Assembly (NCBI RefSeq): GCF_039654945.1
Contig: NW_027361765.1
Location: 14,322,001 to 14,386,000 of the forward strand
Direction of reading: 5' to 3'
DNA from: Dendrobates tinctorius
Taxonomy: Eukaryota
DNA: 64,000 nucleotides
The notes under the pieces are model-generated. The model was not told the DNA's origin and made no database searches. It was given only the letters and a program-made list of their open reading frames with translations. Below are positions 13,198 through 52,898 of this stretch, piece after piece. Both the position numbers and the translations under genes were made by a program. Every line of letters starts with the position of its first letter. Within the stretch, counting starts at the first letter, position 1.

Positions 13198-13809
13198 TAG
13201 AGTTGAGCGAAACGGGTCGAAAAAATTCAAAAGTCGCTGACTTTCGCCAAAGTCGGGTTTCATGAAACGAAACCCGACCTCAGCGTGAGGTCGGCCACGA
13301 GGTCGGCGACTTTAGCGCCAAAGTCGCGTTTCAAAACATGCTTCAGCGCCCTTTTTTAGCCAATGAGGAAGAACGGACACTGTGGGCAACGTGATAACAT
13401 AGGCAGCGGTCCCCACCATCTTTGAGAAGGGCATGCAAGTGATTGGCTTGCTTTGGGGGGCGTCACAGGGGGTATAAAATGGCGTGCACGCCGACCGCCA
13501 TCTTACTTCTGCTGATCTCAGTATAGGAAGAGATGCTGCTGCTGCAGATTCTGTAGGGAGAGCGTTAGGCAGGGAAGAAGAGAAAAATCAGCTGCTGCTG
13601 CTAGCGATTTTGCCTGTACAACACACCAGTCACTGTGCAGTGCAAGGGGAGGCTATATTTTGGTGAATCAGCTCTGTTGGTTGTTAGGCTTCCTTATAAG
13701 GCTACCTGATAGCTGCATTGCTGGTTTCACACTGCTTTGCAAACTGCTTTTTTAAAAGCAATCCTTTTTTTTTTGTCCTGGTGAGATACTGAGCGTGCAT
13801 TTTTTCACA

Positions 13810-14447
13810 CCGTACAGCGGTGTACGCTGCTCTCTCAGTACCGTGTAACGGCTGTTATCACGGCCACAGTGAAGCTAAGGGTGTGACTCTGTAAGGATAA
13901 GTCGAGGTGATGTTCCGTTCTTACAGACCTCCACCTTATAGTTTTGTCTGTTTTTCAAACAGTCTAGTCTATTTGCTGTTTGATTACATTCAAAACTATA
14001 GAGAGACAGCGTGTGTCAGTCCGTATACTAAAAAAAACGGAGCTTGACAATTTAACATACATCGGACAGTGGTGTACGTGCACGCTGCTCTCTCAGTACT
14101 GTGTAACGGCTGTTATCACGGCCACAGTGAAGCTAAGGGTGTGACTCTGCAAGGATAAGTCAAGGAGTTGTTCCGTTCTTACAGACCTCCACCTTATAGT
14201 TTTGTCTGTTTTTCAAACAGTCTAGTCTATTTGCTGTTTGATTACATTCAAAACTATAGAGAGAGAGCGTGTCTCAGTCCGTATACTAAAAAAACACGGA
14301 GCTTTACAATTTAACATACACCGGACAGCGGTGTACGTGCACGCTGCTCTCTCAGTACCGTGTAACGGCTGTTATCACGGCCACAGTGAAGCTAAGGGTG
14401 TGACTCTGTAAGGATAAGTCGAGGAGTTGTTCCATTCTTGCAGACCT
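13810..14447. repeat. ~259-bp tandem repeat x2.5 inside hAT copy 1
   Basis: Anchor gctgctctctcagtac at 13826, 14084 and 14343. Confidence 0.9.
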
Positions 14448-14459
14448 AAGCTCTAGGGA

Positions 14460-15805
14460 GATTCCAATCCTGCCCTGTCCTATATAACATTTTTCACACC
14501 TGCCAAATTCATCCTGTCATACAGCGGTGTGATATACATTGGGCCTCACACAATACATCAGTGTCCAGAAGTGTGTAAGGACATTCCATTTCGGCCGTCC
14601 TTTGTTACATTTTTCACACCAGCCTAATTCAGCCTGTCATACAGCGGTGTGATATACATTGGGCCTCACACAATACATCAGTGTCCAGAAGTGTGTAAGG
14701 ACATTCCATTTCTCCCGTCATATATCACATTTTTCACACCAGCCAAATTCAGCCTGTCATACAGTGGTGTGATATACACTGGCCTGACACAATACCTCAG
14801 TGTCCAGAAGTGTGTAAGGACAATCCATTTCTGCCATCCTATGTCACGTTTTTTCACACCAGCCAAATTCAGCCTGTCATACAGCGGTGTGATATACATT
14901 GGGCCTCACACAATACATCAGTGTCCAGAAGTGTGTAAGGACATTCCATTTCGGCCGTCCTTTGTTACATTTTTCACACCAGCCTAATTCAGCCTGTCAT
15001 ACAGCGGTGTGATATACATTGGGCCTCACACAATACATCAGTGTCCAGAAGTGTGTAAGGACATTCCATTTCTCCCATCATATATCACATTTTTCACACC
15101 AGCCAAATTCAGCCTGTCATACAGTGGTGTGATATACACTGGCCTGACACAATACCTCAGTGTCCAGAAGTGTGTAAGGACAATCCATTTCTGCCGTCCT
15201 ATGTCACATTTTTCACACCAGCCAAATTCAGCCTGTCATACAGCGGTGTGATATACATTGGGCCTCACACAATACATCAGTGTCCAGAAGTGTGTAAGGA
15301 CAATCCATTTCTGTCGTGCTATGTCACATTTTTCACACCAGCCAAATTCAGCCTGTCATACAGCGGTGTGATATACATTGGGCCTCACACAATACACCAG
15401 TGTCCAGAAGTGTGTAAGGACATTCCATTTCTCCCGTCATATATCACATTTTACACACCAGCCAAATTCAGCCTGTCATACAGCGGTGTGATATACACTG
15501 GCCTGACACAATACATCAGTGTCCAGAAGTGTGTAAGGACAATCCATTTCTGCCGTCCTATGTCACATTTTTCACACCAGCCTAATTCAGTCTGTCATAC
15601 AGCGGTGTGATATACATTGGGCCTCACACAATACATCAGTGTCCAGAAGTGTGTAAGGACATTCCATTTCTCCCATCATATATCACATTTTACACACCAG
15701 CCAAATTCAGCGTGTCATACAGCGGTGCGATATACACTGGCCTGACACAATACATCAGTGTCTAGAAGTGGTAGGAGAATTAAATTCTCCCCTGTCCTAT
15801 ATACA
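14460..15805. repeat. 119-120-bp tandem array x~11 immediately upstream of the transposase ATG
   Basis: Anchor acagcggtgtgatatac at 14521, 14641, 14761, 14881, 15001, 15121, 15240, 15360 through ~15719. Confidence 0.95.
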
Positions 15806-15867
15806 CCTTGCACGTTGTTTTACAGTTCCATATCGTTGGTGGAATTGTGGGTACATTTTTCAAAAAA

Positions 15868-18800
15868 ATGAGGAAGTGTGGTGTAAGAGGCCGTGTTAGT
15901 GGGCGGGGGTTGCCAGCTGTTAATGATGGTGTTGGTGTTGGATCTGCTGGTAGTGGCAAAAGCAAAATAACACCTAATGCAGGAGGTGTTAAGCCTGCGT
16001 CATCGTCTGGCTCCACAAGGCCTCGAAGGCTCCCTTTTCTGGGAGTAGGTAAACGGCTTTTAAAGCCGGATCTTCAGGAACAAGTTTTGGCCTACATTGC
16101 TGACTCGGCCTCCAGCTCTATCGCCTCCTCTTCGTCTTTGGAGGCTCATGGTCATGAACCACACCTTTCTTTGTGTCCTTCACCCCAACCAAAATTGAAG
16201 GATGCGGCAGGCCACACAACAGATTACTCCATGGAGCTATTTTCACATACCATGCCTGGGTTATCAAGTGAAATGGTGAATTACCCAGGCCAAGATGAAT
16301 CTGACATGGAGTGCACTGATGCACAGCCACTGATAGATGATTCTGCTGGTACATTCACTCAGAGAACGACATTGTCCTCACAGTGTACTGAGCCAGATTC
16401 TGACCCTGATGAAACTCAGGTGCCCCTTCCCGCATACTATACCACCGTACATGGTGACACAGAGGAAGGTGCACATGACATTGAAGAGGAGGTGATGGAT
16501 GACCCATTTGTTGACCCAGATTGGCATCCATTGGGGGAAGAGGGTGCCGCTACCAATAGCTCCGAAGAGGAGGAGGAGCATACGCAGCAGGCATCGACAT
16601 CGCAACAGCTGTTATCTGGCAGGCACGGAGCAGTCCAAAAACGGGTTGCAAAAAGTCAAAAAGTTGCTGGACTGCTTGGCCAGACAGTCAAAATAGCATA
16701 GCGTGCAAGGACGCAAAATGTCTTCCATAGTAGGAAGAGTGCAGTGTGGCACTTTTTTGAACAAAATCCTAATGATCAGGCCAAGGTTATCTGTAAGAAG
16801 TGCGCAAAGACCTTTAGCCGAGGGAAAAATCTGAAAAATTTGAATACCAGTTGCATGCTTAGACATTTAACCACCATGCACTTGCAAGCGTGGACGGAAC
16901 ACCAAACCTCAAGTACCACATGTGCAAATGCTCCCGAAGAAGGTAGTCAGCAACGCTACATTGTTTCCCCCACTGTAAGCCCACCGGTTAGCACAGCAGC
17001 AAATGTTGAGGTGTCGTTGCAAGGCCAAAGCTGTCAGGGAATCACAATGTTATATCAACGAAAGACTGAATCTAGGCCATCAGAAAGAACAGCAACTCCA
17101 TCACCATCATCAACCCTCTCTCAGTCCGCCCTGTCCACCGCTAGTTCCACCATATGCAGCTCTCAAGTCCAGCTCACCCTGCCAGAGACTATGAGTAGGA
17201 CAAGAAAGTACTCATCCTCTCATCCGCGTACACTGGGTTTGAACGCCCACATTGCCAAACTAATCTCGTTAGAGATGATGCCCTATCGGTTGGTGGAAAG
17301 CGCAGCTTTCCTCGAACTCATGGCCTACGCAGTACCACGCTATGAACTACCCAGTCGCCACTTCTTTTCTCGCAAAGCCATCCCAGCCCTCCACCTTCAT
17401 GTGAAGGACCGCATTGTCCATGCACTCAAGCAATCAGTGAGTGGAAAGGTGCACCTCACAACTGATGCATGGTCCAGTAGGCATGGCCAGGGCCGTTATG
17501 TGTTCATCACTGCGCACTGGGTTAATGTGGTGGATGCAGGGTCCACAGCGGACAGCGGTGGTGGGACTGTGCTGCCTAACTGTTGTGAGTTCATTTTCCC
17601 CTTCACTACTGAGGCCCGAGGAACTCCCTCTTCTGGTAAAGAAAGGTAGTGAGCCTGATTATCAAACACCTGAGCCTGATGACGATGACTGGCTGAGTGG
17701 AGTTACTGACTGGATATAAGGCTGCCGACGCCCTTCTGCCCTGCGGGTGATTTCTCTGTGGGATCCTTGGAGACCAGTCTGAATTCCTGCTCTTCTAAAG
17801 CTAAGTTTTCTGCTCGGCTTTTTGCATTTGTGCTTTGACTTTGTTTTGCTTTTTTTTCTGGATTTCTGCCATTCCCTGCTGGGGTGTGCAGAATTCCTTT
17901 TTTGCTCTGTCTTCTGAAGATACCTGAGTGCTGATTTAGTTTTTGAAGCCTGGCTGCTTCAGGGTCTTTTTCCATATCAGCTTGTTGGCTTATGTCTTTG
18001 GTGGGGTTTTGGCGGATTGCAGACAGCAACCTTCCTTTCCTGTTCTGTTTGGTTAGCTTGGGCCCCATCGTTTGCTCGGCCTGTCTTTCTGTCTGTGTGA
18101 GTGTTTTTTCATCTTGCTTCGCTGTCATTATATGTTGGGGGCTGCCTTTTGCTTTGGGGTCTGCTCTGGGGCAGTTTGGATTTCCTTTTCTGTCTTTGGG
18201 CTATTTGGCTCTCCGGCTGTGATCGAGGGGTCTGGGGCATCGTAGGAGCCCCCCACGGCTACTGCTGGTTGTGTTGATGGGTTCAGGGGTCTGCGGTCTG
18301 ATAGTTGCCAACTTCTCTGGTTTTCTGGACGTAGCTTCTATTTTTGTGTCTGCCTCCTGCGGTGACTCAATCATAACACTAGCCCACGGTATAGGAAACA
18401 GTTGACTGTAGGCCTTCGACCCTCCTCCTCCTACTCCTCTAGAAGCAAAAGCTCATCCCCAGAGCGCAGTCGCAGCAGCACTCCATCCGCAGCTGCCAGT
18501 GTTGCACACGAGGTGTCCCCCTATCGATCAGCTAGTGGAAAGCGTCAGCAGGCTGTGTTGAAGATGATGTTTTTGGGCGACAGACACACCGCGGAGGTAC
18601 TGGCTGACTACTTTCAGCAACAAACTGAGTCATGGCTGGACAGTCCACATCTTGAGGCAGGCAAGGTAGTCAGCGATAACGGCCGTAATTTTGTGGCTGC
18701 CATAGCCCTTTCAAAACTCAGACACATACCTTGCTTGGCTCACACCTTGAACCTGGTGGTGCAGTGCTTCCTCAATAATTATCCAGAGTTAACAGGCCTG

Positions 18801-20192
18801 CTCCAGAAGGTTCGAAAACTGTGCTTGCACATCCGCCGGTCGCCTGTACACTCCAGTCGTATGCAGAAGCTGCAGCGATTGCTACACCTTCCCAAGCACC
18901 AGCTAATTATCGATGTTGCAACAAGGTGGAACTCCACCCTGCACATGGTTGAGCGGCTGTGCGAACAGAGGCAGGCCGTAATGCATTTGTGGGAGGATAC
19001 CCGGACAGGCACTTTGAGGGCAGACATGGAGTTTACAGGTGTGCAGTGGTCAAAGCTGAAAGACCTCTGTAAAGTCCTTCAGTGTTTTGAGGAATGCACA
19101 CGGCTGGTAAGCGCAGACGACGCCATCATAAGCATGACCATCCCACTTATGCGTCTGCTCATGCAAACTTTGACGCACATTAAGGAGCAGGCGTCTGCAG
19201 CCGAGGTTGACGAAGAGGAAGAGGAGGAGGAAATCCTTGATGACAGTCAGCCATTGTCTGCTCCGGGACCTCTCCTGGACGAGGTGGAGGAAGAAGAGGA
19301 AGAGGAGGAGGAGGGTGATGATGGGGATGATTATTTAGGGGAGGAGGATGCTTCTCGTGTGTCCAGAGAAAATGTTGGCATGGCAAGCTCTGGTACAGGG
19401 TTTGTGCGTGACTGGAGGGATGTGGATTTGCCAGAAAGTGCTCCTCCACCAAGCAGTCGCACTGCATCATTGACACCGGGAAAATTGGCCCACATGTCAG
19501 ATTATGCCTTGCAGATCCTAAAAAGGGACCCCCGCATTGCCAAAATGATGAACGATGACGACTACTGGTTGGCCAGCATCCTGAATCCACGCTATAAAGG
19601 CAAATTCCAAAACATCATGCCACAGGAGAACCTTGACCTAATATTGGCTAACAAACAAGCTACTCTGGTAAACCGGTTGGTTGAGGCATTCCCAGCACAC
19701 AGCAGCGGTGATGGTTCTCACACGAGCCGTAGGGGCCAGGGGCAGCTTGGAAGAGGTGTTTGTGGTGCACACATCAGAAGTGGCGTTGGAGACAGGGGTT
19801 TCATGACCATGTTGTGGACTGATTTTTCAAGTCCCGCTCACTCGACTGGTAATACTGCATCGATGGAAAGTGACAGGAGACAGCACTTGTCAACTATGGT
19901 TACAAACTACTTTTCCTCCCATGTCGATGTTCTCCCTCACAGGTCATTCCCCTTTGACTATTGGGCTGCTAAACTGGACACCTGGCCTGAATTGGCACAA
20001 TATGTGCTACAGGAGCTCGCTTGCCCAGCTGCAAGTGTGCTATCGGAAAGAGTCTTCAGTGCTGCTTGGTCAATCCTGACAGAAAAAAGGACCCGTCTGT
20101 TGACCCAAAATGTGGATGATTTAACCTTCATTAAAATGAACCATGCATGGGTTTCCAAGGATTTTGTCCCACCTTCCCCTGATGACACATAG
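15868..20192 (+). pseudogene. BED-finger hAT transposase (ZBED-like TE protein), ~1173 aa when reconstructed
   Basis: ORFs 15808-16701, 16744-17649 and 18402-20192 join in frame after reading through TAG 16699-16701 (CAG in copy 2) and removing the solo LTR plus one TSD. Motifs: BED finger (VWHFF..CKKC..MLRHLTTMH), D in LTTDAWS, D in VSDNGRN, CLAH, TRWNS, E in SVLSERVFS, hATC dimerisation domain. Confidence 0.93.
17581..18378. mobile_element. Solo LTR (798 bp) inserted in the hAT transposase
   Basis: Termini tgttgtga...tcataaca; 5-bp TSD ctaac/ctagc; empty site gtgctgcctagccca present in copy 2 (~44477-44491). Confidence 0.88.
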
Positions 20193-20396
20193 GTTGACAG
20201 AAAAATGGCTTGCTTTGGTCCTCCTCTTCCTGGGACTTGAACAATTTCGCCTTTTGCATCAGCTGAATGTCCAACATCAACATATACCACTTTCTAAAAC
20301 TCCCTAAATGTGCTGCCTCCCCCCCCCATGGCCGGAGTCACCACCTAGCGCATGAAACCGTGCGAGTGCCGTTGCCCTGGACAGGTGGGTAGGCCG

Positions 20397-20530
20397 ACTC
20401 TTGGGCACGGGCACTGGCACACGGTCCCTCATAGTGCAATCAAGTGTCTCTGACGGTGGTGGTGCACACCCGCCGTCAGACACACCGCCGTACTATGAGG
20501 GGCCCAGTGCCAGTACCAACGCCCAAGAGT
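20397..20530 (+). other. ~134-nt stem-loop downstream of the transposase stop, conserved in copy 2 (~49326-49438)
   Basis: Pairings actcttgggc/gcccaagagt, actggcac/gtgccagt, ccctcatagt/actatgaggg, tctgacgg/ccgtcaga. Confidence 0.75.
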
Positions 20531-20612
20531 GGGCCCCCCTTGCTTGGGCAGGGCCCGAGCATTTGCAATCTTTACCTCTCCCTGCTCCTCCGCTGTGTAG
20601 TCTGGGCCGTCA

Positions 20613-21035
20613 AATCCATACTGGGCCTGACACCGTCTGAGCCTGCCTCCTGATCTATAGACATATATTTTGAATGTGTACACTATGCTATCCATACATG
20701 TTATCCAGTGATTCGGTACCCTTTCTCACCTTTGTGCAATCACGTGTAATCCATACTGGGCCTGACACCGTCTGAGCCTGTCTCCTGATCTATAGACATA
20801 TATTTTGAATGTGTACACTATGCTATGCATACATGTTATCCGGTGATACGGTACCCTTTCTCACCTTTGTGCAATCATGTGTAATCCATACTGGGCCTGA
20901 CACCGTCTGAGCCTGCCTCCTGATCTATAGACATATATTTTGAATGTGTACACTATGCTATCCATACATGTTATCCGGTGATACGGTACCCTTTCTCACC
21001 TTTGTGCAATCACGTGTAATCCATACTGGGCCTGA
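20613..21035. repeat. 135-bp tandem repeat x3 inside hAT copy 1
   Basis: aatccatactgggcctga at 20613, 20748, 20883 and 21018. Confidence 0.95.
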
Positions 21036-21140
21036 GAACGGCTGGCGAGCTGTTAAGCAAGCTACAGCACCTGTGGTTTGCACACGTAAGTTTTTCATTT
21101 TTTCAGGAATGACGGTTAGGCCTAATTCCGGAACTGCGGT

Positions 21141-21616
21141 TGACCTGCACTTACTGGGAAATCATCGTTTGCGGGTAATAATTGTAATCCCAGATCCCCA
21201 TCACTAACGGTGTTCAGCGGGTTATCTGCACCTGTAAGCGACAAACGCTGGCCCTTTCAGTGTAGCGCACATGCAGCCACGGACATGTAAGGGCATGACA
21301 CACCAGTTATTGGCCAATCTCACGTGTCAGAGCCTCATGTGTCCCTCTAGTAAGCCGGACTCGGACCGCGGGGCATGACGGAGTCTCGTTCGTTAACGGA
21401 ATTAAGCTTGCAATGTGTGCATCTTTTTTGTTGCGGGATGGTTGAGGTTGCCCGTGTTGAGTCAAATTACGCCGCAGGCTCCACTCCTGGTGGTGCCCTT
21501 CTGGACATTCCTTTAAGGTTCAGCTTTGCAACCATACTGCCCACGTAAAACAAACACTTTGCCTTCATGAACGCTGTTTGGAGGGTCGTGACTCATGGGA
21601 ATAACGCCGCCCAATC
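21141..21616 (-). pseudogene. Diverged partial 18S rRNA fragment (approx. vertebrate 18S nt 1100-1660) captured inside the hAT
   Basis: Collinear reverse-complement matches to conserved 18S segments: cacttactgggaa, gatccccatcac, tcagtgtagcgc, ggacatgtaagggcat, gagtctcgttcgtta, cccgtgttgagtcaaatta.gccgcaggctccactcctggtggtgcccttc, ttcagctttgcaaccatact, tcatgggaataacgccgcc. Internal deletion near 21407-21434. Confidence 0.92.
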
Positions 21617-21704
21617 AGTTAACCTGCTAGACAATGCTCCCAAGTATGTTCCTAGGAGGAAGGTAATGCCACTGTGGCGACCGTAGTCCTGGGGGCGACA
21701 CAAG

Positions 21705-21995
21705 TGCACTGATGCCCAGCCACTGCTCGATGAATCTGCTGGTACATTGACCCAGACCACTACATTCCCCTCGCACTCTACACGGCCTGAATCTGACCCT
21801 GATGAATCTCAGGTTACCCTTCCCATATACTGTTCCATCTTACATGGTGACAAAGAGGAAGCTGCAGATGAAAGTGCAGGTTCGGCCCACCCGCCATCAG
21901 ACACACCACCGTACTATCAGGGGCCCTGTGCCAGTGCCGTCGCCAATGAGTGGGCCCCCCTCTGCATGCTCAGGATCACAGCACTTGCAAGGTTG
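21705..21995 (+). other. Internal duplications of a transposase N-terminal segment (21705-21870) and of the 3' hairpin arm (~21887-21995)
   Basis: Similar to 16311-16478 (gtgcactgatgc.cagccactg...ctgaccctgatgaa.ctcagg) and to ~20467-20570. Confidence 0.85.
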
Positions 21996-22825
21996 AAATA
22001 CTGTGCAGTGAGATGGAAGATGGGGACAATGAGGAGTCCAGACTAGTACAGGGATTCCCTAGCGAGGAGACTTATTTCATTGTTTTCAATGTTGGGACAG
22101 CAATTTTTGGGGAGCACTATACTCTGGAGAATGATAGATGGGGCCCACCATACACTGGAACATTCTAAAGGTGGACATCAGACACTGGAGCAGCATTTAA
22201 AGGGCCCATTATACACTAGAGCATTAGAAATGGGGCCCATTATGTATGGAGCATTATTTGGGCCCATAAGACAGTGGAGCTTCATCCATGGGGACCAACA
22301 TATACTGTAGCATTATGTGGAGCTCATCATATACTGTTTCAAACATTATATGGGACCAATGATTCTGTATGGAGAAAAAGATGGGCCTCATCATGAGATG
22401 TAAAAAGTGATGTATTTTTCTTTGTAGTATACCACTATTTCTCTGCCGTATCGGAGCAGCATGAGTTGTGGTATGTGTTAAAGGAGCGCTCTTTCGCCCA
22501 GGGCACATGAAAACCTGGAGCCAGCCCTACCCCCCCACAACTTTAGCCAAATAACCCCCATTTTTCAGTGCGTAACTAGTATTATGAAGTAAATAAAGGG
22601 TGACAAGCTTCAGTAATAAGAATTTATGCTTTTGGCATTCAAATGGGCACTGTAAGTGTGTTTCCTGTCCTCCTCTCACTGCCGACTTTTTTTCCCCATT
22701 TACTTACATTGGGTTTCGTGTTTCAGTCGGACCCCCGACTTTTCCCTATAGTTGGCCGATTTCGTTCAACCCGACTTTTGTGAAACCCAACTCGACCCGA
22801 AAAAAGGCAAAGCCGCTCATCTCTA

Positions 22826-41735: not shown

Positions 41736-41924
41736 TTAGTGTGCAGTGAAAGGGGAGGATTTTTGTTGTGTGCAGCAGCGCTGGTGGTGATTAGGCTGCC
41801 TTATAAGGCTACCTGCTAACTGCATTGCTGTGTGCACACTGCTGTTCAAACTGCTTTTTTCAAAGCACTCCAACTTTTATTATTTTTGTCCTGGTGAGTT
41901 ACTGAGCGTTCATTTTTTCACACA

Positions 41925-42720: not shown

Positions 42721-45700
42721 TTGGTACATTTTCCCAAACTTGAGGAAATATGGTGGAAGAGGCCATGGACGTGGGCAGGGGGGCACAGCTGGTACTGATG
42801 GTGGTGGTGCATCGGCTTGTTCTGGCAAAAGCACAATAGCAGGTAAGGCAGGAGGTGTTGAGCCTGCGTCATCGTCTGGCCCCAGAAGGCCTGTAAGGTT
42901 GCCTTTTCTTGGAGTAGGAAAACTGCTTTTAAAGCCGGAGCATCAGGAATTGGTTTTGGCGTACATTGCCGAAACCGCCACCAGCTCTATCGCCTCCTCT
43001 TCTGAACGTTCAAAACCTGCAAGCACGGAGTCGTCAGTGCAGGGTTCTGGTCAGGAATAACACCTTTCCTTGTGTCCTTCACCCCCACCAAAAGTTAAGG
43101 ATGCGGCAGCCCACACTTCAGATTACCCTATAGAGCTCTTTTCACATACCATGCCTGGGTTATCCAGTCAAATCCAGAATTCCCCAGTCCAAGATGAATC
43201 TGACATAGAGTGCACTGATGCACAGCCACTGCTAGATGATTCTGCTGGTACATTGACCCAGAGCACTACATTGCCCGCACAGTCTATTGAGCCAGAATCT
43301 GACCCTGATGAAACTCAGGTGCCCCTTCCTGCATACTATACCACCTTACACGGTGACACAAAGGAACGTAAAGAGTAAGGTGCAGATGACTTGAAGAGGA
43401 GGTGATGGATGACCCAGTTCTTGACCCGGATTGGCATCCATTGGGGGAGGAGGGTGGCGCTGGCAATAGTTCAGATAAGGACAAGGATCCACAGCAGGCA
43501 TTGTCATCGCAGCAGCAGTTAACTGGCAGGCCCATAGCTGTCCAAAAACATGGAACAAAAACTAAAAGAGTTGCAGGACAGGTTGGCGAGACGGTCAACT
43601 TAGCACAGTGTGCAAGGCCAGAAAATGTATACCATAGTAGGAAGAGTGCAGTGTGGCACTTCTTTGTCCAAAATCCTACTGAGGAGGCAAAGGTTACCTG
43701 TAAGAAGTGCGGAAGGACCTTTAGCCGAGGTAAACAACTCAAAAATTTGAATACCAGTTGCATGCTTAGACATTTTATCAACATGCACTTGCAAGCGTGG
43801 ACGGACTACAAAACCTCAGGTAGCACATGTGCACCTGCTCTGACTGAAGGTAGCCAGCAACGCTCCATCGCTTCCCCCACTGTAACACCACCACCACCGT
43901 TAAGCACACCACCAGCACTAAATGTGGAGGTGTCGTCGCAAGGCCAAAGCACTCAGGGAATCACAATGGTTTTGCAACACAACACTGAATCTAGGCCATC
44001 ACCACCAATACCATCACCAACCCCCTCTCACTCCGTCCGGTCCACCGCTACTTCCCCCATATGCAGCTCTCCAGTCCAGCTCACCCTACCAGACATTCTG
44101 AGTAGGACAAGAAAGTACTCATCCTCTCATCCGCGTACACTTTGTTTGAATGCCTACATTGCCAAACTAATCTCATTAGAGATCATGCCCTACCGTTTGG
44201 TTGAAAGCGAAGCTTTCTCCGACCTCATGGCCTACGCTGTCCCATGCTATGACCTACCCAGTCAGCACTTCTTTTCTCGAAAAGCCATCCCTGTCCTCCA
44301 CCGGCATGTGAAAGACCGTATTGTCCATGCACTAAAACAGTCAGTGAGTGGAAAGGTGCACCTCACAACAGATTCATGAACCAGTAGGCATGACCAGGGC
44401 TGTTACGTGTCCATCACTGCGCACTGGGTTAATGTGGTGGATGCAGGCTCCACTGGGGACAGGGGCGGTGGAACAGTGCTGCCTAGCCCATAGTATAGGA
44501 AGCAGTTGGCTGTAGGCTTTTGATCCTCCTCCTCTATCAGCGAAAGCTCATCCACAGAGATCAGTTGCATGAGCACTCCATCCGCAGCTGGCAGTGTTGC
44601 ACATGAGGTGTCCCACTATCGAACAGCTAGTGGTAAGCTTTAGCAGGCTGTGTTAAAGATGATGTCTTTCGGCAACAACAGACACACCACGGAGGTACGG
44701 GCCGACTTCTTGCAGCGACAAACTGAGTCATGGCTGTGCAGTCTACATCTTGATTCAGGCAAGGTAGTCAGTAATAATGGCCGTAATTTTGTGGCAGCCA
44801 TAGCCCGTCCAAAACTCACACACATACCTTGCCTGGCTCTCACTTTGAACCTGGTGGTGCAGTGCTACCTTAATAATTATCCAGAGTTAACATCTCTGCT
44901 CCATAAGGTGTGAAGACTGTGTTCGCACATCCGTCGCTCAAACGTCCACTCCACTCGTATGCAGAAGCTGCAGCAATTGCTCCACCTCTCCAAGCACCTC
45001 CTAATGATAGACGTTGCAACAAGGTGGAACTCCACCCTGCTCATGGTTGAGAGGCTGTGCAAACAGAGGCAGGCTGTAATACATTTGTGGGAGGATACAC
45101 GGGCAGGCAGTTTGAGGGAAGACATGGAATTGTCGGGTGTACAGTGGTCAAAGCTGAAAGACCTCTGTAAAGTTTTGAGGAATGCACATGGCTGGTAAGC
45201 ACACATGATGCCATCATAAGCATGAGCATCCCACTTATGCGTCTGCTCATGCAAGGTTTGACACACATTAAGGATCAGGCGTCTGCAGTGGAGGAGGAGG
45301 AGGAGGGAAGCCTTGCTGACAGTCAGCCATTGTCTGGTCAGGGAACTGTCCTGGACAAGGTGGAGGAAGAAGAGGAGGAGGATGAGGGGGATGATTATTT
45401 TGGGCAGGAGGATGCTTCTCAGGGGGCAAGAGAAAGTATTGGCGTTCCAAGGTCAGGTACAGTGTTTGTGCATGACTGTAGGGATGTGGATTTGCCAGAA
45501 AGTGCTCCTCCACCCACCACTGGCAGTGCATCATTGACACCTGGAAAATTGGCCCACATGTGCGATTATGCCTTGCGGATCCTAAAAAGGGACCCCCCGC
45601 ATTGACAAAATGATGAGGGATGACGACTACTGGCTAACAAGCAACTCTGGTAAACCATTTGTTTGAGGCTTTCCCTGCACACAGCAGCAGTGCTGGTTCT

Positions 45701-46117
45701 CCCACGAGCCATAGTGGGCACAATGGAAGAGGTGTTCGTGGTGAACACAGCCAAAGTGGCGTTGGAGACAGGGGTTTAATGACCATGTTGTGGAATGATT
45801 TCTCAAGTACTGCTCACACGACTGCTAATACTGCATCGATTAAAAGTGACAGGAGACAGCAGTTGTCAACTATGGTTACAAACTACTCCTCCCATATCGA
45901 TGTTCTCCCTCACAGGTCATTCCCCTTTGACCATTGGGCCTCTAAAATGGACGCCTGGCCTGAATTGGCACAATATGCCATACAGGAGCTCGCTTGCCCT
46001 GCTGCTAGTGTGTTATCTGAAAGAGTCTTCAGTGCTGCTGGATCAATTCTGACAGAAAAAAGGACCTGTCTGTCTATCCAAAATGTTGATGATCTAACCT
46101 TCATTAAAATGAACCAT

Positions 46118-49061
46118 TATTATTATTATGCATTTATATATCGCCATTTATTCCATGGCGCTTTACATGTGAAAAGGGGAAATATAGACAAGTAAAATAA
46201 ACATGTGTAAGACAAGGGACACACAAGTACATAAGGAGAGGGGACCCTGCCTGCGAGGGCTCACAGTCTACAGGGATTGGTGAGGATACAGTAGGAGAGG
46301 GTAGAGCAGTAGTGTGGTTCAGTAGACCGAGGAGCATTGCAGGCTGTAGGCTTGTCAGAACAGGTGGGTCTTCAGGTTCTTCTTGAAGGTTTCCACTGAT
46401 GGTGAGAGTCTCATGTGTTGTGGCAGGGAGTTCCAGAGCATGGGGTAAGCACGGGAGAAGTCTTGTATGCAGTTGTGGGAAGAAGAGATAAGGGGGGAGT
46501 GGAGAAGGAGATCTTGAGATGATCGAAGGTTGCATGCGGGTAGGTACCTAGAGACCATGTCACAGATGTATGGAGGAGACAGGTTGTGGATGGCTTTGGA
46601 TGTCATGGTTAGGGTTTTGAATTGTAGCCTCTGGGCAATAGGAAACCAGTGAAGAGCCTGGCATAGGGGGTAGGCTGGGGAATAGCGGGGAGACAGGTGG
46701 ATTAGTCGAGCAGCAGAGTGTAGGATGGACTGGAGCGGAGCCAGAGTGCTAGACGGGAGGCCAGAGAGTAGGAGGTTGCACAATACTCAGGAGGTGTTCC
46801 AGCAACTTCGACCAAAGGATGGTTAAAATCAAAAGACTTTATTCCAAAAAAATGATTAAAAACAGAATAGATGCATAAAAAACATATGGTTCACCATTGT
46901 GACAGACGCTTACGCGTTTCGGACTGGAGGGTCCTTATTCATAGCTTAACATGGAATAACATTTTGTCAGATTGTTCCATAAAATTAATGTCCCTTATTA
47001 TCCAATATGAGGAAGAAAAAGTTTCCGTTTTCGATAAAAAAAAATCAAAGATATTGAAACTGAATTAATACAATTTGAGAAAACGGATTATTTTATTAAA
47101 TCTAAAAAGAAGATCTTTGATAATCTGAATATGCTGGAAGGGGACATTGTAAAAAGGAAACAAGAAAAATTTAAAAGAGACATTAGAGATTATGATGAAA
47201 ATGTGGTCTACAGTTGGAAAACATTCAATAGAAATAATACCCTGAACAGTAGCTTTCAAAAGCGGTATAAATCGCAAAGCAGCCGTTGACATTGATGGAT
47301 AAGTCTGGTAGAGGGGTAGAGTGAGATAGGGGAAAGATGATGAATTCTGTTTTGTCCATGTTCAGTTTGAGAAAGCGAGCAGAGAGGAAGGCTGAGATAG
47401 CAGACAGACATTGTGGGATTTCAGTCAGTAAGGAGGCGAGGTCGGGTCCAAATAGGTAGATCTGCGTGTCATCGGCATAGAGGTGATACTGCAAACCGTG
47501 GGATTCTATGAGCTGTCCCAAGCCGAAGGTATAGATGGAAAATAGTAGGGGCCCTATGACAGAGCCATGGGGAACACCGACAGACAGGAGGCGAGGTGAG
47601 GAGGTGGTGTGTGAGAGGGAGACATTAGGTGTTCGGTCTGTTAGGTATGATGAGATTCAGGATAGGGCCAGGTCTGTGATGCCAAGAGATGAGAGAGTCT
47701 GTAGCAGGAGGGAATGGTCTACGGTGTCGAAGGCAGAGGACAGGTCCAGGAGAAGGAGGACAGAGTAATGTCGCTTGCTCTTGGCGATTAGTAAGTCGCT
47801 AATGACTTTAGTTAGGGCAGTTTCAGTTGAGTGATGCGGTCGGAAGCCAGATTGTAACCGGTCAAAGAGGAACAGGAGGAGAGGTGGGAGGACAGTTCAA
47901 GATATACATGCTGTTCCAGTAGTTTTGAGGTGTAATTGAGAAGAGATATTGGGCGATAGTTAGACACAGAGGATTGGTCAAGGGAGGGCTTTTTGAGGAT
48001 GGGTGTGATTGAGGCATGTTTGAAGGATGAGTGAAAGACACCATTTGTAAGTGAAAGGTTGAAAAGGTGTGTTAGAGATGGGATGAGGACTGTGGCTAAG
48101 TTAGGGATGAGGTGAGATGGGAGTGGGTCGAGGGCACAAGTGGTGAGGTGTGATCTTGACAGAAGTGTGGAGAGCTGATCTTCTGTCATGGTGGAGAAGC
48201 TGGCTTTTGCAGAACAGGGCTTAGCGGCTAAGAGGGGCATTGGGGGCTGCGCACCAAAGTTTTGTCTGATCGTGTCGATCTTCTGCTTAAAGGAGGCAAA
48301 GTCTTCAGCAGAAATGAGAGGAGGGGGAGGAGGTGTTGTGGGACGGAGTAGAGAATTGAAATTGTTGAAGAGCTGTTTAGGGTTGTGAGACAGGGAGGAT
48401 ATGAGAGATGCGAAGTAAGTTTGTTTTGCGGCAGAGAGCGTGGACTTAAAGCTGACAAGGGACTGCTTTTATGCATTGAAGTGCTCAGTAGAATGGGTTC
48501 TCTTCCATCTCTGCTCAGCGGCCCTGGAAACCCATCTCAGTTCTTTGGTCAGGCTGGTCAGCCAGGGCTGCCTGTTGATTGTTTGAGTTTTGCTCTGCAT
48601 GGAGGGCAGCCGAATCGAGTGTTGCTGTTATTGTGGTGTTATAAAAAGTGGCAGCAGCATCTGTGTCATGAAGGGAAGCTATGTCTGTAAGAGGGAGAAG
48701 GGACTCAGAGAGTGATTGTAAATTGAGGTGTTTGAGATTCCTGCGAGGGTGAGCGAGTTTATGGAGCGGGGGTTGCGCAGTAGGAGAGGAGAGGGAAGAG
48801 AATGTCAGTAGGTTGTGGTCAGACAGGGGGAGGGGTGGGTTATTGAGGTTAGTGAGGGACCAGATACGAGTGATGATAAGGTCCAGTGTGTGACCATCTT
48901 TGTGAGTGGCCGCAGAGGACCATTGAGTTAGGCCGAGGGAAGCCGTGAGCGATAGAAGTTTAGAGGCAGCCGGGGTGGAAGTGTCAATGGGGAGGTTGAA
49001 GTCGCCCATGTTGATGGTGAGGATGTCAGCAGAAAGGAAATGGAGTAGCCAGGTGGGGAAG
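46118..49061 (-). mobile_element. 5'-truncated L2-clade LINE (APE + RT pseudogene)
   Basis: MGDFNLP and LSDHNLL (endonuclease); NYRPISLL and [11 protein letters not shown] (RT); LHWFPIAQRLQFK, LRSS and LWNSLP (L2 C-terminus); (TAA)n tail; no TSD. Confidence 0.92.
46781..47280. mobile_element. Penelope-like fragment replacing part of the L2 RT
   Basis: AT-rich insert; HHR-like motif on minus at 46908-46946 (gctATGAATAAggaccctccagtccGAAAcgcgTAagc); peptide WNNILSDCSIKLMSLIIQYEE resembles amphibian PLE N-terminal regions. Confidence 0.55.
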
Positions 49062-49521
49062 TGGGTTTCAAAGGATTTTGTCCCACCTTCCCCTGATGAC
49101 ACATAGGTTGCCAGAAAGCTTCCTCGCTTTTGTTCTCCTCTTCCTCGGACTTGCCCAATTCCGCCCTTTGCAGCAGCTGAATGTCCAGCCAACACATCAA
49201 CATATGCCATTTTTTTAAACCTCCCTAAGTGGGCTGCTCACCCCCCTGAATGGCTGGGGTCAACACCTGGCGCACCAAGGCAAGTGCCGTTGCTCTGAAC
49301 AGGTGGATGGGCCCACAGATGGCCGACGGCACTGGCACAGGGCCCCTCATAGTACATTACAGTGTCTCTGGCGGTGGGGGGACCCACTCGCCGTCAGACA
49401 CACCAGTGTACTATGAGGGGCCCTGTGCCAGTACCGTTGACCACGAGTGTGCCCCCCCTGCTTGGTCATGGCCACAACACTTGCAAGTTGCAAGACTTAC
49501 CTCTCCCTGCTCCACCGCTGT

Positions 49522-50110
49522 GTAGTTTTGGCAGTTAAATCCTTCAAAGGGATGGCCACTAGAAATTTGGTGTATTGATCGATGATGGTTAAGATCTATG
49601 CCCTGTCCTGCTGGCCTCTACCTTCAGATGATCAATGGCTACCATTTGAAATGGACGTCAACTTACAAGCGGATGCAGTGGTGCTTTATGATCACCTATC
49701 ACAGTTGTGATAGTCACAGACGTGTGCCATTCCTGCCACCATTTTTCAATGTCTCCTCTCATGCCAATCCAAAAAAATCACCTATGATATGTGGCTTCTG
49801 TCTTTTGCACTCCAAAATGACCAGACACATCATGATAGGCAGTGAGGACCATGCCTACATCTCTCCCTGTGATCACAATTTGATGGAGACGAGCAATGGT
49901 GATGTGATCCATGCTACTGCGATAAAGCAATCCTTTCTTCATAAAGAACCATTTTCACTGTCTCCACAGACACGGTAATTGAGGGTCTGCATCGCCTCTG
50001 CAACATCTACCGGGAGGTTTTCCCGCGATGAGTAATTCCCAAATTTCTGCTAACACTCGACTTTCCGTCTGTACTTGTATCCATTTAGTTTCCAGTAGTG
50101 GAGAGTCTGG
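49522..50110 (-). pseudogene. Ty3/Gypsy integrase fragment (connection region, HHCC zinc finger, first catalytic D) captured inside hAT copy 2
   Basis: Manual minus-strand translation: WIQVQTESRVLAEI..LWRQ*KWFFMKKGLLYR..HQIVI..AYHDVSGHFGVQKT..*FFWIGMRGDIEKW..KAPLHPLVS*RPFQMVAIDHLKVEASRTG (frameshift) ILTIIDQYTKFLVAIPLKDLTAKTT. No LTR or TSD. Confidence 0.88.
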
Positions 50111-51030
50111 ACTGGCTTACTGAGATTGAAATATATACGAAGATTTAAAAGTACCACAACACTGTATACTGTTTTACGCTTCGACTACCTTTCCCTTTTT
50201 CTATTTGTTAAATTCTGGTGTAATACATACTGAGCCTGTGAGTGTCTGTGTCTGACTCCAGAAGTATAGATGGAAATTTACAATTACCCCTAAACTGGAT
50301 ACACCTGGTATGTGCTGATACAGTACCTTTGTTCAAAATTTTGTATTACGGTATCATCCATAGTGAGTGAGCATGTGTGGTTTACGCCTTCTATGTATAC
50401 GGTGAATCGGAGATAACAATTTTTACCCTATACTCGATACAGCTTGTATCTTGTTATACAGTAGCTTTGTTCGACATTTAGTATTGCGATCAAATCCATA
50501 CTGAGTAAGCGTCTGAGACTGACTACGGGACTATGTATACGGAGATTTCAATTGTACCATATAATATATATACTTGCTATCTTGTTATCCAGTACCTTTT
50601 TTACAACATTTTTTATTATGGTCAAACCCAGACTGAGTGAGCATCTGAGGGTGACTCCGAAAATATATACTGAGATTTCAAATTTGGCCAACACTGTATA
50701 CAGCTGTACGCTTGTGTTACATTACCCATTTACAGCTTTTCATATTTTTGTGTAATCCATACTGGGCCTGAGAGCGTTTATGTCTGCCTCCTGAAATGTA
50801 TACGGAGATTCAGAATGTTTACATTATACAATATATACCTTGTATCTGGTGATACTGTACCCTTTTTCACCTTTTTATTTTATTGGGTAATCCATACTGA
50901 GCCTGTGAGCGTCTGTGTATGACTCATGAAATATATACAGAGATTTACTGTTATCCCTAGACTGTATAGAGCTGTACGCTTCTGATACAGTACCATATAT
51001 CTGCTGGTATTTTGGGTCAATTTTCTAAAA
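50110..51030. repeat. Diverged ~125-135-bp tandem units (~7)
   Basis: Recurring ccatactgag...gtctgtg...tatatacggagatt..caatt; related to 20613-21035. Confidence 0.75.
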
Positions 51031-51031
51031 C

Positions 51032-51451
51032 ATGAGGAAGTATGGTGGAAGAGGACGTGGACGTGGGGGGCCACCTGGTACTGATGGTGGTGGTGGTGCA
51101 TCTGCTGGTAGTGCCAAAAACACAATAGCAGGTTAGGCAGGAGGTGTTGAGCCTGCGTCATAGTTTAGCTCTGGAAGGCCTGTAAGGCTACATTTTCTGG
51201 GAGTAGATAGACTGCTTTTTAAGCCAGAGCATCAGGAACTGTTTTTGGCTTACATTGCTGATACAGCTTCTAGCTCTATCGCCTCCTCTTCTGAAGTTTA
51301 AAAAAATGCAAGCACTGAGTCGTAAGTGCAGGCTTCTGGTCAGGAGTAACCACTTTCCTTGTGTCCTTCACCCACACCAAAAGTGAAGGATGCGGCAGCC
51401 CACACTTCAGATTACTCCATGGAGCTCTTTTCACATACCATGCCTGGGTTA
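51032..51451 (+). pseudogene. Second, truncated copy of the transposase 5' end within hAT copy 2
   Basis: atgaggaagtatggtgga...ELFSHTMPGL, matching 42740-43160 and 15868-16262. Confidence 0.88.
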
Positions 51452-52326
51452 AATAAAAATGGGGCCCATCATATACTGGAACATTCCAAATGGGGCAGAT
51501 CAGACACTGGAGAAGCCTCTATGGGGCACATGATACACTGGAGCATTAGAAATGGGGCCCATTATATATGGAGCATTATTAGGGCCCATAAGACACTGGA
51601 GCATGATCCATGAGACAAATCATATACTGGAGCATTCCAAATGGGGGACATCAGACACTGGAGCAGCATTTACGGGGCCCTTTATACACTGGAGCATTAC
51701 AAATGGAGCCCATTATTATTATTATTGTTATTATTTATATAGCACCATTGATTCCATAGTGCTGTACATGAGAAGGACATTGAGGGACACTGAGCATTAT
51801 TAGGGCCAATCATACACTGGAGCATCATCCAAGAGGCTCATCATGTACTGGAGCATTCCAGATTGGGGACATCAGACACTGGAGCAGCATTTATGGCACC
51901 CATTATACACTGGAGCGTTAGAAGTGGAGCCCATTATATGTGGAGCATTATTTGGGCCCATAACACACTGGAGCATTGTCTATGAGGACCATCATATACT
52001 GCAGCATTATGTGGAGTTCATCATATACTGTATGGAACATTATATGTGGCCAATTATTCTGTATGGAGAAATATATGGGGCTCATGATTCTGCATGGCGC
52101 ACAATGTGGAGGCCATAATACTGTATGGAGTAATATATTGTCCTTTTTTTGAGCTATTGTACAATTTAAAATAGATCAGTCATGTCCTGTAAGCAGTGAA
52201 TTATTTGTCATTGTACTATACCTATATTTCTGTGCCGTATTGGAGCATCATGAGTTATGGTATGTGTTAAACGGGCGCACTGACACTCTTTGGGCCAGGG
52301 CGCCTGAAAACCTGGAGCCAGCCCTA
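51452..52326. repeat. ~40-bp minisatellite plus the right end of a different hAT MITE (also at ~22100-22528)
   Basis: Units ggggcccat.atacactggagcatt; ends aaaacctggagccagccct in both large copies. Confidence 0.7.
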
Positions 52327-52898
52327 CCCCCCCACAACTTTAGCCAAATAACCCCCTGTTTTCAATGCGTAACTATTATTATGAAGTAAATTAAGGTTGA
52401 CAAGCTTCAGTAATATGAATTGATGTTTTTGGCATTGAAATGGGCACTGTAGGTGTGTTTACTGTCCTCCACTCCCTGCTGACTTTGCTTCCCCATTGAC
52501 TTGCATTGGGTTTCATGTTTCAGTCGGCCTCCGACTTTTCCCTATAGTCGGCCGATTTCGTTCGACCTGAGTTTTGAGAAAGTCGGGTTTCATGAAACCC
52601 GACTCGACCCTAAAAAAGGCCAAGTCGCTCATCTCTAGTAATAACAAATTTTGAAAATAGATCAAATGTCAGTGTCGGTGCAAGAATATAGAAATGAAGA
52701 CTCTCAAATGTGTTGTACAAGTGTGAGCTTTCATGAAATGCCTCATATGCTATGTTAAGATGCATGGCCAATTCTATTAAGCAGACCTGGTGCTCCACAT
52801 GTATAAGGAACATGGAGCTGAAAATGGAATATCTTGGCATTGTGAATAGTGGGATATTGAAGCGAGCATTTTTGTACAGACATTAATATGGAGAATAG

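What the first reader, a model, noticed from the sequence alone, without database searches (positions are those of the whole stretch)
13198..52637. Large 'Pack-hAT' family with a variable cargo bay between transposase and right TIR
Seen: two TSD-bounded copies share the layout left TIR - tandem arrays - BED/DDE transposase - hairpin - variable region - shared minisatellite/MITE end - right TIR. The variable region differs: 135-bp array + 18S rRNA fragment + transposase fragment in copy 1; Gypsy integrase fragment + array + transposase 5' duplicate in copy 2. The 18S and integrase pieces lack their own termini or TSDs, unlike the later nested insertions, and both lie antisense to the transposase. 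Established: capture by template switching during gap repair is known for Pack-MULEs, CACTAs and Ac/Ds. Inference: this is a coding vertebrate hAT family that repeatedly captures and spreads foreign sequence at one site. Read-through transcription could make antisense RNA against rRNA and Gypsy elements.
Basis: partly seen in the sequence, partly recalled or inferred. Interest (0 to 1): 0.85.

Follow-up and report, generated by a model that had tools for sequence, protein, structure and literature searches.

The report
Frog hAT transposon carrying old passenger fragments
Two dead copies of a poison-frog cut-and-paste (hAT) transposon carry a decayed piece of the 18S rRNA gene and a piece of a Gypsy integrase gene; each piece was picked up once, long ago, and then copied passively, a known habit of such elements and not a cargo bay that keeps refilling.

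Summary
The window contains two hAT copies (13198-22825 and 39949-52637) with the same layout. Each has a 12-bp TIR and an 8-bp TSD matching at 7 of 8 positions. The antisense 18S piece in copy 1 and the antisense Gypsy integrase piece in copy 2 are real.

Seven further complete or partial copies fetched from Dendrobates tinctorius and two Ranitomeya species change the interpretation.
- **18S piece:** an independent D. tinctorius insertion with its own perfect TSD carries a deletion derivative of it, so it was transposed with the element. This scan had already noted the same 18S cargo in more than ten other windows of this genome.
- **Integrase piece:** it is not specific to copy 2. Remnants lie at the same junction in Ranitomeya copies, with 12 of 16 bases in copy 1, so it is ancestral and was eroded to different extents.
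- **"Transposase fragment", "hairpin fragment" and downstream arrays:** these are duplicates of the element's own sequence. The first two are conserved across genera.
- **Ranitomeya:** the "bay" varies almost only in tandem-array copy number.

So there were two old captures next to a strong conserved palindrome, followed by deletion and array turnover. hAT filler DNA (maize Ds2/Ds-l4) and multicopy frog Pack-hAT elements are already published. I found no evidence for an antisense-RNA role. Interest is modest.

The parts
13190..13197 (.). Copy 1 left TSD (GTGATCAG)
   Evidence: It matches 22826-22833 at 7 of 8 positions. The flank is a 43-bp minisatellite that continues at 22826.
13198..13541 (+). 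Copy 1 left TIR (13198-13209) and subterminal region
   Evidence: 82% identical to copy 2 at 39949-40293 and 96.8% to L001 copy 3.
13820..15806 (+). Copy 1 upstream tandem arrays (258-bp unit at 13820-14447; 120-bp unit at 14454-15806)
   Evidence: TRF. The 120-bp array is expanded in L001 copy 3.
15808..20192 (+). Copy 1 transposase reading frame (BED zinc finger and hAT dimerisation domain). It has one in-frame stop at 16699-16701.
   Evidence: With the nested 800 bp skipped, the frame stays open for 1194 codons with one internal stop (count only).
17579..18378 (.). Nested 800-bp repeat inside the copy 1 transposase gene
   Evidence: Absent from copy 2, L001 copy 3 and all Ranitomeya copies. 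Related sequence occurs elsewhere in L002-L006.
20193..20601 (+). Copy 1 post-stop region with conserved palindrome (arms 20392-20435 and 20492-20535)
   Evidence: -51.4 kcal/mol, z -9.1
20602..20617 (-). 16-nt remnant of the integrase-derived sequence in copy 1
   Evidence: 12 of 16 identical to copy 2 in fixed register after the shared anchor. Absent from the downstream duplicate of the post region.
20613..21035 (+). 135-bp tandem array, weakly homologous to the element's own sequence upstream of the transposase gene
   Evidence: TRF. Homologous to copy 2 at 50127-50946 and to 42387-42693.
21036..21111 (.). 76 nt of unknown origin next to the 18S piece, also present in L001 copy 3
   Evidence: the only matches are itself and L001 36863-36938 (98.7%)
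21112..21630 (-). Decayed 18S rRNA fragment (Rfam model positions 1118-1666, with extra upstream 18S seen by eye)
   Evidence: L001 copy 3 keeps 21455 onward and lacks 21112-21454, with a TG microhomology at the junction.
21703..21879 (+). Duplicate of transposase 5' segment 16310-16486 (ancestral; present in all Ranitomeya copies)
21886..22002 (+). Duplicate of part of the post-stop hairpin region (ancestral)
22119..22391 (+). Minisatellite shared with copy 2 (51457-52085); not found in the Ranitomeya copies
22399..22825 (+). Copy 1 right subterminal region and right TIR (22814-22825)
22826..22833 (.). Copy 1 right TSD (GTCATCAG)
39941..39948 (.). Copy 2 left TSD (GTAATACC)
39949..40293 (+). 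Copy 2 left TIR and subterminal region
40294..41739 (.). 1.45 kb absent from copy 1. It holds a 272-bp direct repeat pair and MITE-like pieces that recur in other loci.
41740..42693 (+). Copy 2 upstream 240-bp array plus the segment just upstream of the transposase gene
42694..46117 (+). Copy 2 transposase remains (BED and hAT dimerisation), with many frameshifts and stops
46118..49061 (-). Nested LINE fragment with reverse-transcriptase ORFs, interrupting the last codons of the transposase
   Evidence: (RVT_1)
49062..49526 (+). Copy 2 post-stop region with palindrome (arms 49309-49367 and 49396-49454)
   Evidence: -59.8 kcal/mol, z -11.4
49527..50110 (-). Gypsy-type integrase fragment (H2C2 zinc finger plus the start of the catalytic core), broken by stops and one frameshift
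   Evidence: A syntenic remnant lies at L002 13504-13599 and in L005.
50127..50946 (+). Degenerate 132/135-bp arrays, homologous to 42299-42700 of the same element
50575..51451 (+). Direct duplicate of 42299-43162 (upstream segment plus transposase 5' end), 73.7% over 892 nt
51457..52085 (+). Minisatellite shared with copy 1
52188..52637 (+). Copy 2 right subterminal region and right TIR
52638..52645 (.). Copy 2 right TSD (GTAATAAC)

Best explanation
These are two inactive copies of one dendrobatid hAT family. Copy 1 is young and nearly intact; copy 2 is old and broken. The family's 3' non-coding part is a fossil of aberrant repair or replication. The master element reads: left end, arrays, transposase, post-stop palindrome, Gypsy-integrase filler, then a partial second copy of the element's own sequence, then the right end. 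That partial second copy consists of the upstream segment, transposase 5' piece, deletion junction and palindrome region. It was probably built by serial template switching next to the strong palindrome. In one Dendrobates sub-lineage a second filler, about 0.5 kb of 18S rDNA plus 76 nt of unknown origin, replaced part of the duplicated block. Both fillers were then copied passively by ordinary cut-and-paste transposition with gap repair. Differences between copies come mainly from deletion of parts of this patchwork and from expansion or contraction of tandem arrays, not from new captures. Shown here: the structure, the sharing of fillers among independent insertions and genera, and the self-derived nature of the rest. 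Inferred: template switching as the mechanism, and the fillers' lack of function.
For: A third copy (L001 27516-38200, D. tinctorius GCA_039654945.1) has a perfect TSD (TTTATTAC) at a different locus. It is 96-98% identical to copy 1 and carries the same 18S piece, with identical substitutions in the 88 nt compared, minus an internal 343-nt deletion. Ranitomeya variabilis and R. imitator copies (L002-L006) share the order post region, variable part, transposase fragment (positions 526-692 of the copy 2 transposase segment that starts at 42694), post duplicate, right end. The post region and its downstream duplicate diverge right after the same anchor, and integrase-derived sequence starts at that point. 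Against copy 2, L002 matches 29/37 (z 10.6), L005 39/61 (z 5.3), tblastx gives 56% over 32 aa, and copy 1 matches 12/16 in register. In copy 2, 50575-51451 duplicates 42299-43162, and the 132/135-bp arrays match the upstream segment (z 10-37). The five Ranitomeya variable regions are 81-88% tandem array and almost entirely shared. No 18S was found in L002-L006. The palindrome is conserved and very stable, and both ancestral breakpoints lie within about 70 nt of it. No TSD flanks the 18S piece. Filler DNA from genes and LTR retrotransposons in hAT (Ds2/Ds-l4) is documented in PMC3260210, and multicopy Pack-hAT in Xenopus in PMC8277862.
Against: Only nine complete or partial copies from three assemblies were examined, and no genome-wide census was possible. 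No second copy holding the long (0.6 kb) integrase piece was found, so its ancestry rests on short remnants; two Ranitomeya copies are marginal and one shows none. The donor sequences are not in hand, so junction microhomology at the capture sites could not be checked. Two breakpoints near a palindrome is a small sample. The left end of the copy 3 deletion coincides with the Rfam end of the 18S piece. That leaves open that the short form is older and the long form arose by re-copying from rDNA.
Confidence: 0.7

Rival explanations
1. One reading: an active 'Pack-hAT' family with a dedicated site downstream of the transposase that repeatedly captures new foreign DNA, so that each sub-lineage carries different cargo.
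For: Two unrelated foreign pieces (18S, integrase) lie in the same 2-kb interval between the palindrome and the right end. Both lack termini and both were propagated. A private 340-bp AT-rich segment in one R. imitator copy (L004 53755-54093) and the 76 nt of unknown origin at 21036-21111 could be further captures.
Against: The integrase piece is ancestral to all copies examined, not specific to copy 2. Five Ranitomeya copies show no differing foreign cargo. Most of the 'variable' content is the element's own sequence or arrays. The two pieces are not at one site; they lie about 0.5 kb apart, on either side of the array.
Confidence: 0.15
2. The foreign pieces are leftovers of ordinary nested insertions into a master copy, later trimmed by internal deletions. 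The integrase piece would come from a whole Gypsy element. The 18S piece would come from a LINE-mediated retrocopy of an rRNA fragment. No template switching is needed.
For: Nested insertions do occur in these copies (the 800-bp repeat and the LINE). An A-rich stretch adjoins the 3' side of the 18S piece when read in the 18S sense (21089-21102). Internal deletions are frequent, for example copy 3 lacking 21112-21454.
Against: No LTR, poly(A) tail proper or TSD is detectable around either piece. The integrase filler begins exactly where the post region and its duplicate diverge, next to self-derived duplicated segments in direct order. That is the signature of serial template switching rather than of insertion plus two deletions.
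Confidence: 0.2
3. The antisense 18S and integrase pieces are functional. Read-through from the transposase gene would make antisense RNA or small-RNA precursors against rRNA or Gypsy elements, and the cargo would be kept by selection.
For: Both pieces are antisense to the transposase. Earlier scan notes say the 18S piece is retained in many copies (unverified here).
Against: Two of two antisense has p = 0.25 by chance. The 18S piece scores only 121 bits over about 430 nt, with an internal deletion of about 100 nt and heavily substituted blocks. Copy 3 lost two thirds of it, and most lineages lost the integrase piece. Both patterns point to neutral decay. No transcript data are available.
Confidence: 0.04

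Closest known systems
Maize Ds2 / Ds-l4 elements of the Ac/Ds (hAT) family with 'filler DNA' (Du et al. 2011, PMC3260210)
   Same: hAT ends with an 8-bp TSD. Internal sequence is replaced or supplemented by unrelated filler copied from genes, LTR retrotransposons, other transposons or intergenic DNA. Clusters of copies share one filler. The origin is attributed to errors in repairing excision breaks.
   Different: Ds elements are non-autonomous deletion derivatives. Here the filler sits in an element that still has a full-length transposase frame (copy 1 has one stop plus one nested insertion; L002 has a 1068-aa ORF). The host is a vertebrate, and one filler is rDNA.
Animal Pack-TIRs, for example multicopy Pack-hAT-N8_XT of Xenopus tropicalis (Tan et al. 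2021, PMC8277862)
   Same: A frog hAT element carries a few hundred bp of non-transposon host DNA between its ends and is amplified to several loci with distinct TSDs. Template-switching models (gap filling, FoSTeST) were proposed. Antisense transcription was discussed as a possibility.
   Different: Those elements are short and non-autonomous, with recent captures and identifiable parental genes. Here the carrier is a 9.6-12.7 kb coding-type element. The captures are old (one predates all copies examined in two genera), and the cargo is rRNA and retrotransposon sequence.
Plant Pack-TYPE elements (Pack-MULE, Pack-CACTA and others; Gisby and Catoni 2022, PMC8903248)
   Same: TIR elements that mobilise captured DNA.
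   Different: By definition they are non-autonomous and carry fragments of protein-coding genes. Neither holds here.
Large dendrobatid hAT elements with internal tandem arrays and palindromes
   Same: Same genome, with long tandem arrays flanking a BED/hAT transposase and hairpin-forming repeats.
   Different: Whether they are the same family was not tested. A sequence look-up with the left end of this family returned nothing.

Membership tests
hAT superfamily DNA transposon | 8-bp target site duplication | tested here: met
   Copy 1 and copy 2 each match at 7 of 8 positions. L001 copy 3 matches 8 of 8.
hAT superfamily DNA transposon | Short terminal inverted repeats with subterminal short repeats | tested here: met
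   12-bp TIR TAGAG(T/A)TGAGCG at both ends of both copies. AAGTCGGGTTTC-type motifs recur in both subterminal regions.
hAT superfamily DNA transposon | Transposase with a C-terminal hAT dimerisation domain (PF05699), often with an N-terminal BED zinc finger | tested here: met
   Pfam: zf-BED E 4e-11 and 6e-11; Dimer_Tnp_hAT E 3e-10 and 1.5e-11. L002 has a 1068-aa ORF with both domains.
hAT superfamily DNA transposon | RNase-H-like DDE catalytic core | tested here: inconclusive
   My scans of the window ORFs gave no Pfam hit for the core. Relatives P0005 and P0007 carry precomputed PF27039 (ZBED1 RNase-like helical). Catalytic residues were not mapped.
Pack-TYPE / Pack-MULE-like element (plant definition) | Non-autonomous: no transposase gene | tested here: not met
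   Both copies carry the transposase gene. The copy 1 frame is open for 1194 codons apart from one stop and one nested insertion.
Pack-TYPE / Pack-MULE-like element (plant definition) | Cargo is fragments of host protein-coding genes | tested here: not met
   The cargo is an 18S rRNA fragment and a retrotransposon integrase fragment.
Animal Pack-TIR (Tan et al. 2021) | Non-transposon sequence flanked on both sides by sequence of one TIR element | tested here: met
   The 18S piece lies between element sequence on both sides in copy 1 and in L001 copy 3. The integrase piece is transposon-derived and would not count.
Animal Pack-TIR (Tan et al. 2021) | Multicopy with distinct TSDs, showing transposition after capture | tested here: met
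   Copy 1 (GTCATCAG) and L001 copy 3 (TTTATTAC) are at different loci. Further copies are reported only in unverified scan notes.
Animal Pack-TIR (Tan et al. 2021) | Identifiable parental copy of the captured sequence | not testable with these tools
   No frog rDNA or donor Gypsy sequence was available. The eukaryotic genome cannot be searched by DNA with the tools at hand.

The most novel reading that the evidence does not exclude
The conserved palindrome just after the transposase stop is a built-in hotspot for template switching. It would make this hAT family unusually prone to internal duplication and filler capture. Its very abundant 18S-bearing sub-lineage would then feed antisense 18S-like and Gypsy-like RNA into the germline small-RNA pathway. 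That would make it a coding vertebrate DNA transposon acting as a recurrent sequence-capture vehicle with regulatory side effects.
Probability: 0.08. Interest if true: 0.65.

Novelty: new member of a known kind. Interest (0 to 1): 0.3.

Why it matters
- **Annotation:** an abundant transposon carrying 0.2-0.5 kb of 18S-like sequence scatters false rRNA hits through dendrobatid assemblies. Its transposase is also fused into many chimeric gene models: Ranitomeya imitator 'proteins' combining it with Ras, P450, Ig or fibronectin domains appeared.
- **Transposon biology:** this is a clean, datable vertebrate example of filler capture and partial self-duplication in a coding-type hAT element. The breakpoints lie next to a conserved palindrome, which makes the link between palindromes and template switching testable.
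- **Limits:** it does not show a new mechanism, and it gives no sign that the cargo does anything.

Tried and rejected
- **Copy-2-like relatives by protein:** I searched with the BED ORF of copy 2 and found only Ranitomeya proteins. A search with the 126-aa ORF antisense to the integrase piece found nothing. So I have no second copy with the long integrase piece.
- **Scan-index look-ups:** queries with the left end and with the 18S piece returned nothing. The operators state that such blanks mean nothing.
- **Solved structures:** a search with the H2C2 piece gave only a chance ribosomal-protein hit.
- **P0007 locus:** I fetched this D. tinctorius locus hoping for more copies. It holds a different hAT family (43% identity) and no member of this one.
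- **TSDs around the 18S piece:** none found.
- **Ranitomeya array homology:** the downstream 115-124-bp arrays showed no detectable homology to their upstream arrays at this sensitivity. The self-duplicate origin of the arrays is therefore shown only for the Dendrobates copies.
- **The copy 1 'stub':** as a free local alignment it is not significant (z 1.0). It is convincing only because its register is fixed by the adjoining anchor (12 of 16).
- **What I did not do with broken genes:** the integrase pieces were searched apart and never joined or mended. The copy 1 transposase was read across the nested 800-bp insert only inside a script, to count stop codons. The joined sequence was not printed, saved or searched.
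- **Human sequence:** no fetched contig looked human.

Full report
**What is in the window**

Self-comparison shows two collinear elements on the + strand, 80-88% identical segment by segment.
- Copy 1 runs 13198-22825. It is inserted in a 43-bp minisatellite that resumes at 22826.
- Copy 2 runs 39949-52637.
- Both begin with TAGAGTTGAGC and end with its imperfect inverse. Both are flanked by 8-bp duplications matching at 7 of 8 positions.

Pfam finds a BED zinc finger and a hAT dimerisation domain in both copies.
- In copy 1, skipping a nested 800-bp repeat (17579-18378) leaves the frame open for 1194 codons with one internal stop. This was a count in a script only.
- Copy 2 is badly broken, and a nested LINE (46118-49061, minus strand) cuts off its last codons.

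TRF confirms the arrays: 258- and 120-bp units upstream, a 135-bp unit downstream in copy 1, and 240-bp and 132-bp units in copy 2. The palindrome after the stop codon is real and very stable: -51 and -60 kcal/mol as DNA, z -9 and -11.

**The two foreign pieces**

*18S.* Rfam places a eukaryotic SSU rRNA match on the minus strand at 21112-21542 (120.9 bits, E 4e-32, model positions 1118-1666). Read by eye, recognisable 18S sequence continues to about 21630. The piece is heavily decayed: well-conserved blocks alternate with strongly substituted ones, and about 100 nt are missing internally.

*Integrase.* On the minus strand of copy 2, translation of 49527-50110 reads as the N-terminal third of a Ty3/Gypsy integrase.
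- The pieces follow in order: zinc-binding H2C2 region, first catalytic-Asp motif, one frameshift, second catalytic-Asp motif.
- Searched apart, the pieces give Integrase_H2C2 E 9e-4 and rve E 0.067, in the right order.

Neither piece has termini of its own. No TSD is detectable around the 18S piece: one shared 7-mer, with one expected by chance.

**Related copies from elsewhere**

The C-terminal transposase ORF finds dendrobatid proteins. Their loci gave seven further complete or partial copies.

| Locus | Source | Content |
|---|---|---|
| L001 | Dendrobates tinctorius GCA_039654945.1 | Copy 3 (27516-38200): perfect TSD TTTATTAC, unrelated flanks, 96-98% identical to copy 1; plus the start of a further copy |
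| L002, L003, L006 | Ranitomeya variabilis | Copies 75-85% identical to the window copies |
| L004, L005 | R. imitator | Copies 75-85% identical to the window copies |

L002 has a 1068-aa ORF with both domains.

**The 18S piece travelled with the element**

Copy 3 lacks window positions 21112-21454 but keeps 21455 onward. The first 88 nt there are 100% identical to copy 1, including every departure from the 18S consensus. The junction shows a TG microhomology. Two insertions at different loci, each with its own TSD, thus share one capture.

Notes from other windows of this genome report the same antisense 18S piece of about 470-480 nt in hAT copies more than ten times. Follow-up agents called it a passive passenger present in most copies. 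I did not verify those notes, but they agree with copy 3. None of the Ranitomeya loci has an 18S match. The capture therefore belongs to a Dendrobates sub-lineage.

**The integrase piece is ancestral, not specific to copy 2**

In every copy the post-stop region occurs twice: once after the transposase, and once (in part) just before the right end. The two versions diverge immediately after the same short anchor (alignment A1). In copy 2 the integrase-derived sequence starts at exactly that point. The sequence following the anchor in other copies compares with copy 2 as follows.

| Copy | Match to copy 2 after the anchor | Significance |
|---|---|---|
| L002 | 29/37; tblastx 56% over 32 residues covering the second catalytic-Asp motif | z 10.6, 0 of 300 shuffles |
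| L005 | 39/61 | z 5.3, 0 of 300 shuffles |
| L003, L006 | marginal | z about 2.5-2.8 |
| L004 (first copy) | none | z 0.1 |
| Copy 1, copy 3 | 12/16 in fixed register (binomial p about 1e-4) | not significant as a free local alignment |

The simplest reading is a single old capture that different lineages eroded to different degrees. Copy 2 kept about 0.6 kb and copy 1 kept 16 nt.

**The rest of the "bay" is the element's own sequence**

- The "transposase fragment" of copy 1 (21703-21879, a copy of 16310-16486) and the following "hairpin fragment" (21886-22002) occur in the same order in all Ranitomeya copies: transposase-segment positions 526-692 joined to post-region positions 221-461, then the right end.
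- That join looks like the deletion junction of a non-autonomous derivative.
- In copy 2, 50575-51451 is a direct duplicate of 42299-43162 (73.7% over 892 nt). The 132/135-bp arrays of both window copies are homologous to the segment just upstream of the transposase gene (z 10-37).
- The 3' part therefore reads as a partial second copy of the element: upstream segment, transposase 5' end, deletion, palindrome region, right end. It is joined to the first copy through the integrase filler.
- In the copy 1 lineage the 18S piece, plus 76 nt of unknown origin (21036-21111, also in copy 3), replaced part of that block. In copy 2 a different part was lost.
- In five Ranitomeya copies the interval is 2.3-4.7 kb long, 81-88% tandem array and almost entirely shared. 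The only private non-repeated stretches are the diverged integrase remnant of L002 and one 340-bp AT-rich segment in L004.

**Mechanism**

What is shown is the patchwork structure, its conservation, and the propagation of both fillers. The rest is inferred.
- I infer serial template switching during repair synthesis or replication, as proposed for Ds filler DNA (PMC3260210) and animal Pack-TIRs (PMC8277862).
- The direct order of the self-derived segments fits this. So does the filler sitting exactly at the point where the post region and its duplicate diverge.
- Both ancestral breakpoints lie within about 70 nt of a strong conserved palindrome, which also fits. That is only two breakpoints.
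- Nested insertion followed by deletions remains possible. An A-rich stretch beside the 18S piece keeps a retrocopy origin alive, at low odds.
- Nothing supports an antisense-RNA function. Orientation is uninformative (two of two, p = 0.25), and both pieces show the losses and substitutions of neutral DNA.

**Comparison with what is known**

The element meets the hAT criteria I could test: TSD, TIR, BED and dimerisation domain. The catalytic core was not mapped.

It is not a Pack-TYPE element in the plant sense. It is not non-autonomous, and it carries no host exon. It works like Ds2/Ds-l4 filler-bearing elements, and like the multicopy Pack-hAT-N8_XT of Xenopus (PMC8277862). That paper counts 208 hAT-associated captures across animals. 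The D. tinctorius genome paper reports hAT elements as 3.91% of the assembly but does not describe this family (PMC11152451). I could not query Dfam or Repbase.

**Verdict**

This is a new, well-resolved member of a known kind: a hAT element carrying filler DNA. The new details are a coding-type carrier, an rRNA filler, a retrotransposon filler older than all copies examined in two frog genera, and a "one-and-a-half element" architecture. Interest is modest, about 0.3.

Noticed in passing
window 35887-36076: An interstitial telomere-type repeat, (TTAGGG) about 32 times, imperfect (67% matches), between the two hAT copies.
   Followed up: no
window 30752-32007: An 11-bp microsatellite-like array (ATACATACTAC)n at 30752-31451 is followed by its reverse complement at 31566-32005. 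Together they form a palindrome of about 1.2 kb made of simple repeats.
   Followed up: no
window 12758-13198 and 22826-23868: A 43-bp minisatellite (about 34 units in all) is the insertion target of copy 1 and is split by it.
   Followed up: partly
window 27893-28744 (-): A 283-aa ORF with a weak retroviral Gag_p30 match (E 0.0015), probably part of an LTR or endogenous retrovirus-like element between the hAT copies.
   Followed up: no
window 32213-32416: A GC-rich 21-bp minisatellite of about 10 units.
   Followed up: no
L007 10001-12526 (D. tinctorius JAYMGB010000273.1): A different hAT family (43% identity) with an uninterrupted 841-aa BED/hAT transposase gene, annotated as ZBED4-like. It could be an active or domesticated element.
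   Followed up: no
L002 9941-13147 (R. variabilis CM120277.1): An uninterrupted 1068-aa ORF of this family's transposase. The family may still be active in Ranitomeya. I could not find a matching TSD for this copy.
   Followed up: partly
Proteins P0001, P0003, P0004, P0006, P0017, P0039: Ranitomeya imitator gene models fuse this transposase to Ras/Roc, Ig, P450, fibronectin, kinase or vomeronasal-receptor domains. These are most likely annotation chimeras caused by intronic hAT copies.
   Followed up: no
L004 53755-54093: A 340-bp AT-rich segment private to one R. imitator copy, inside its downstream array.
   Followed up: partly
window 40294-41739; L003 37257-37571 and 44604-45435; L005 15841-16297; L007 14045-14364: Short pieces (50-150 nt) of the extra 1.45 kb in copy 2 recur as inverted pairs in several loci of all three species. 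This suggests an unrelated MITE nested in copy 2.
   Followed up: no
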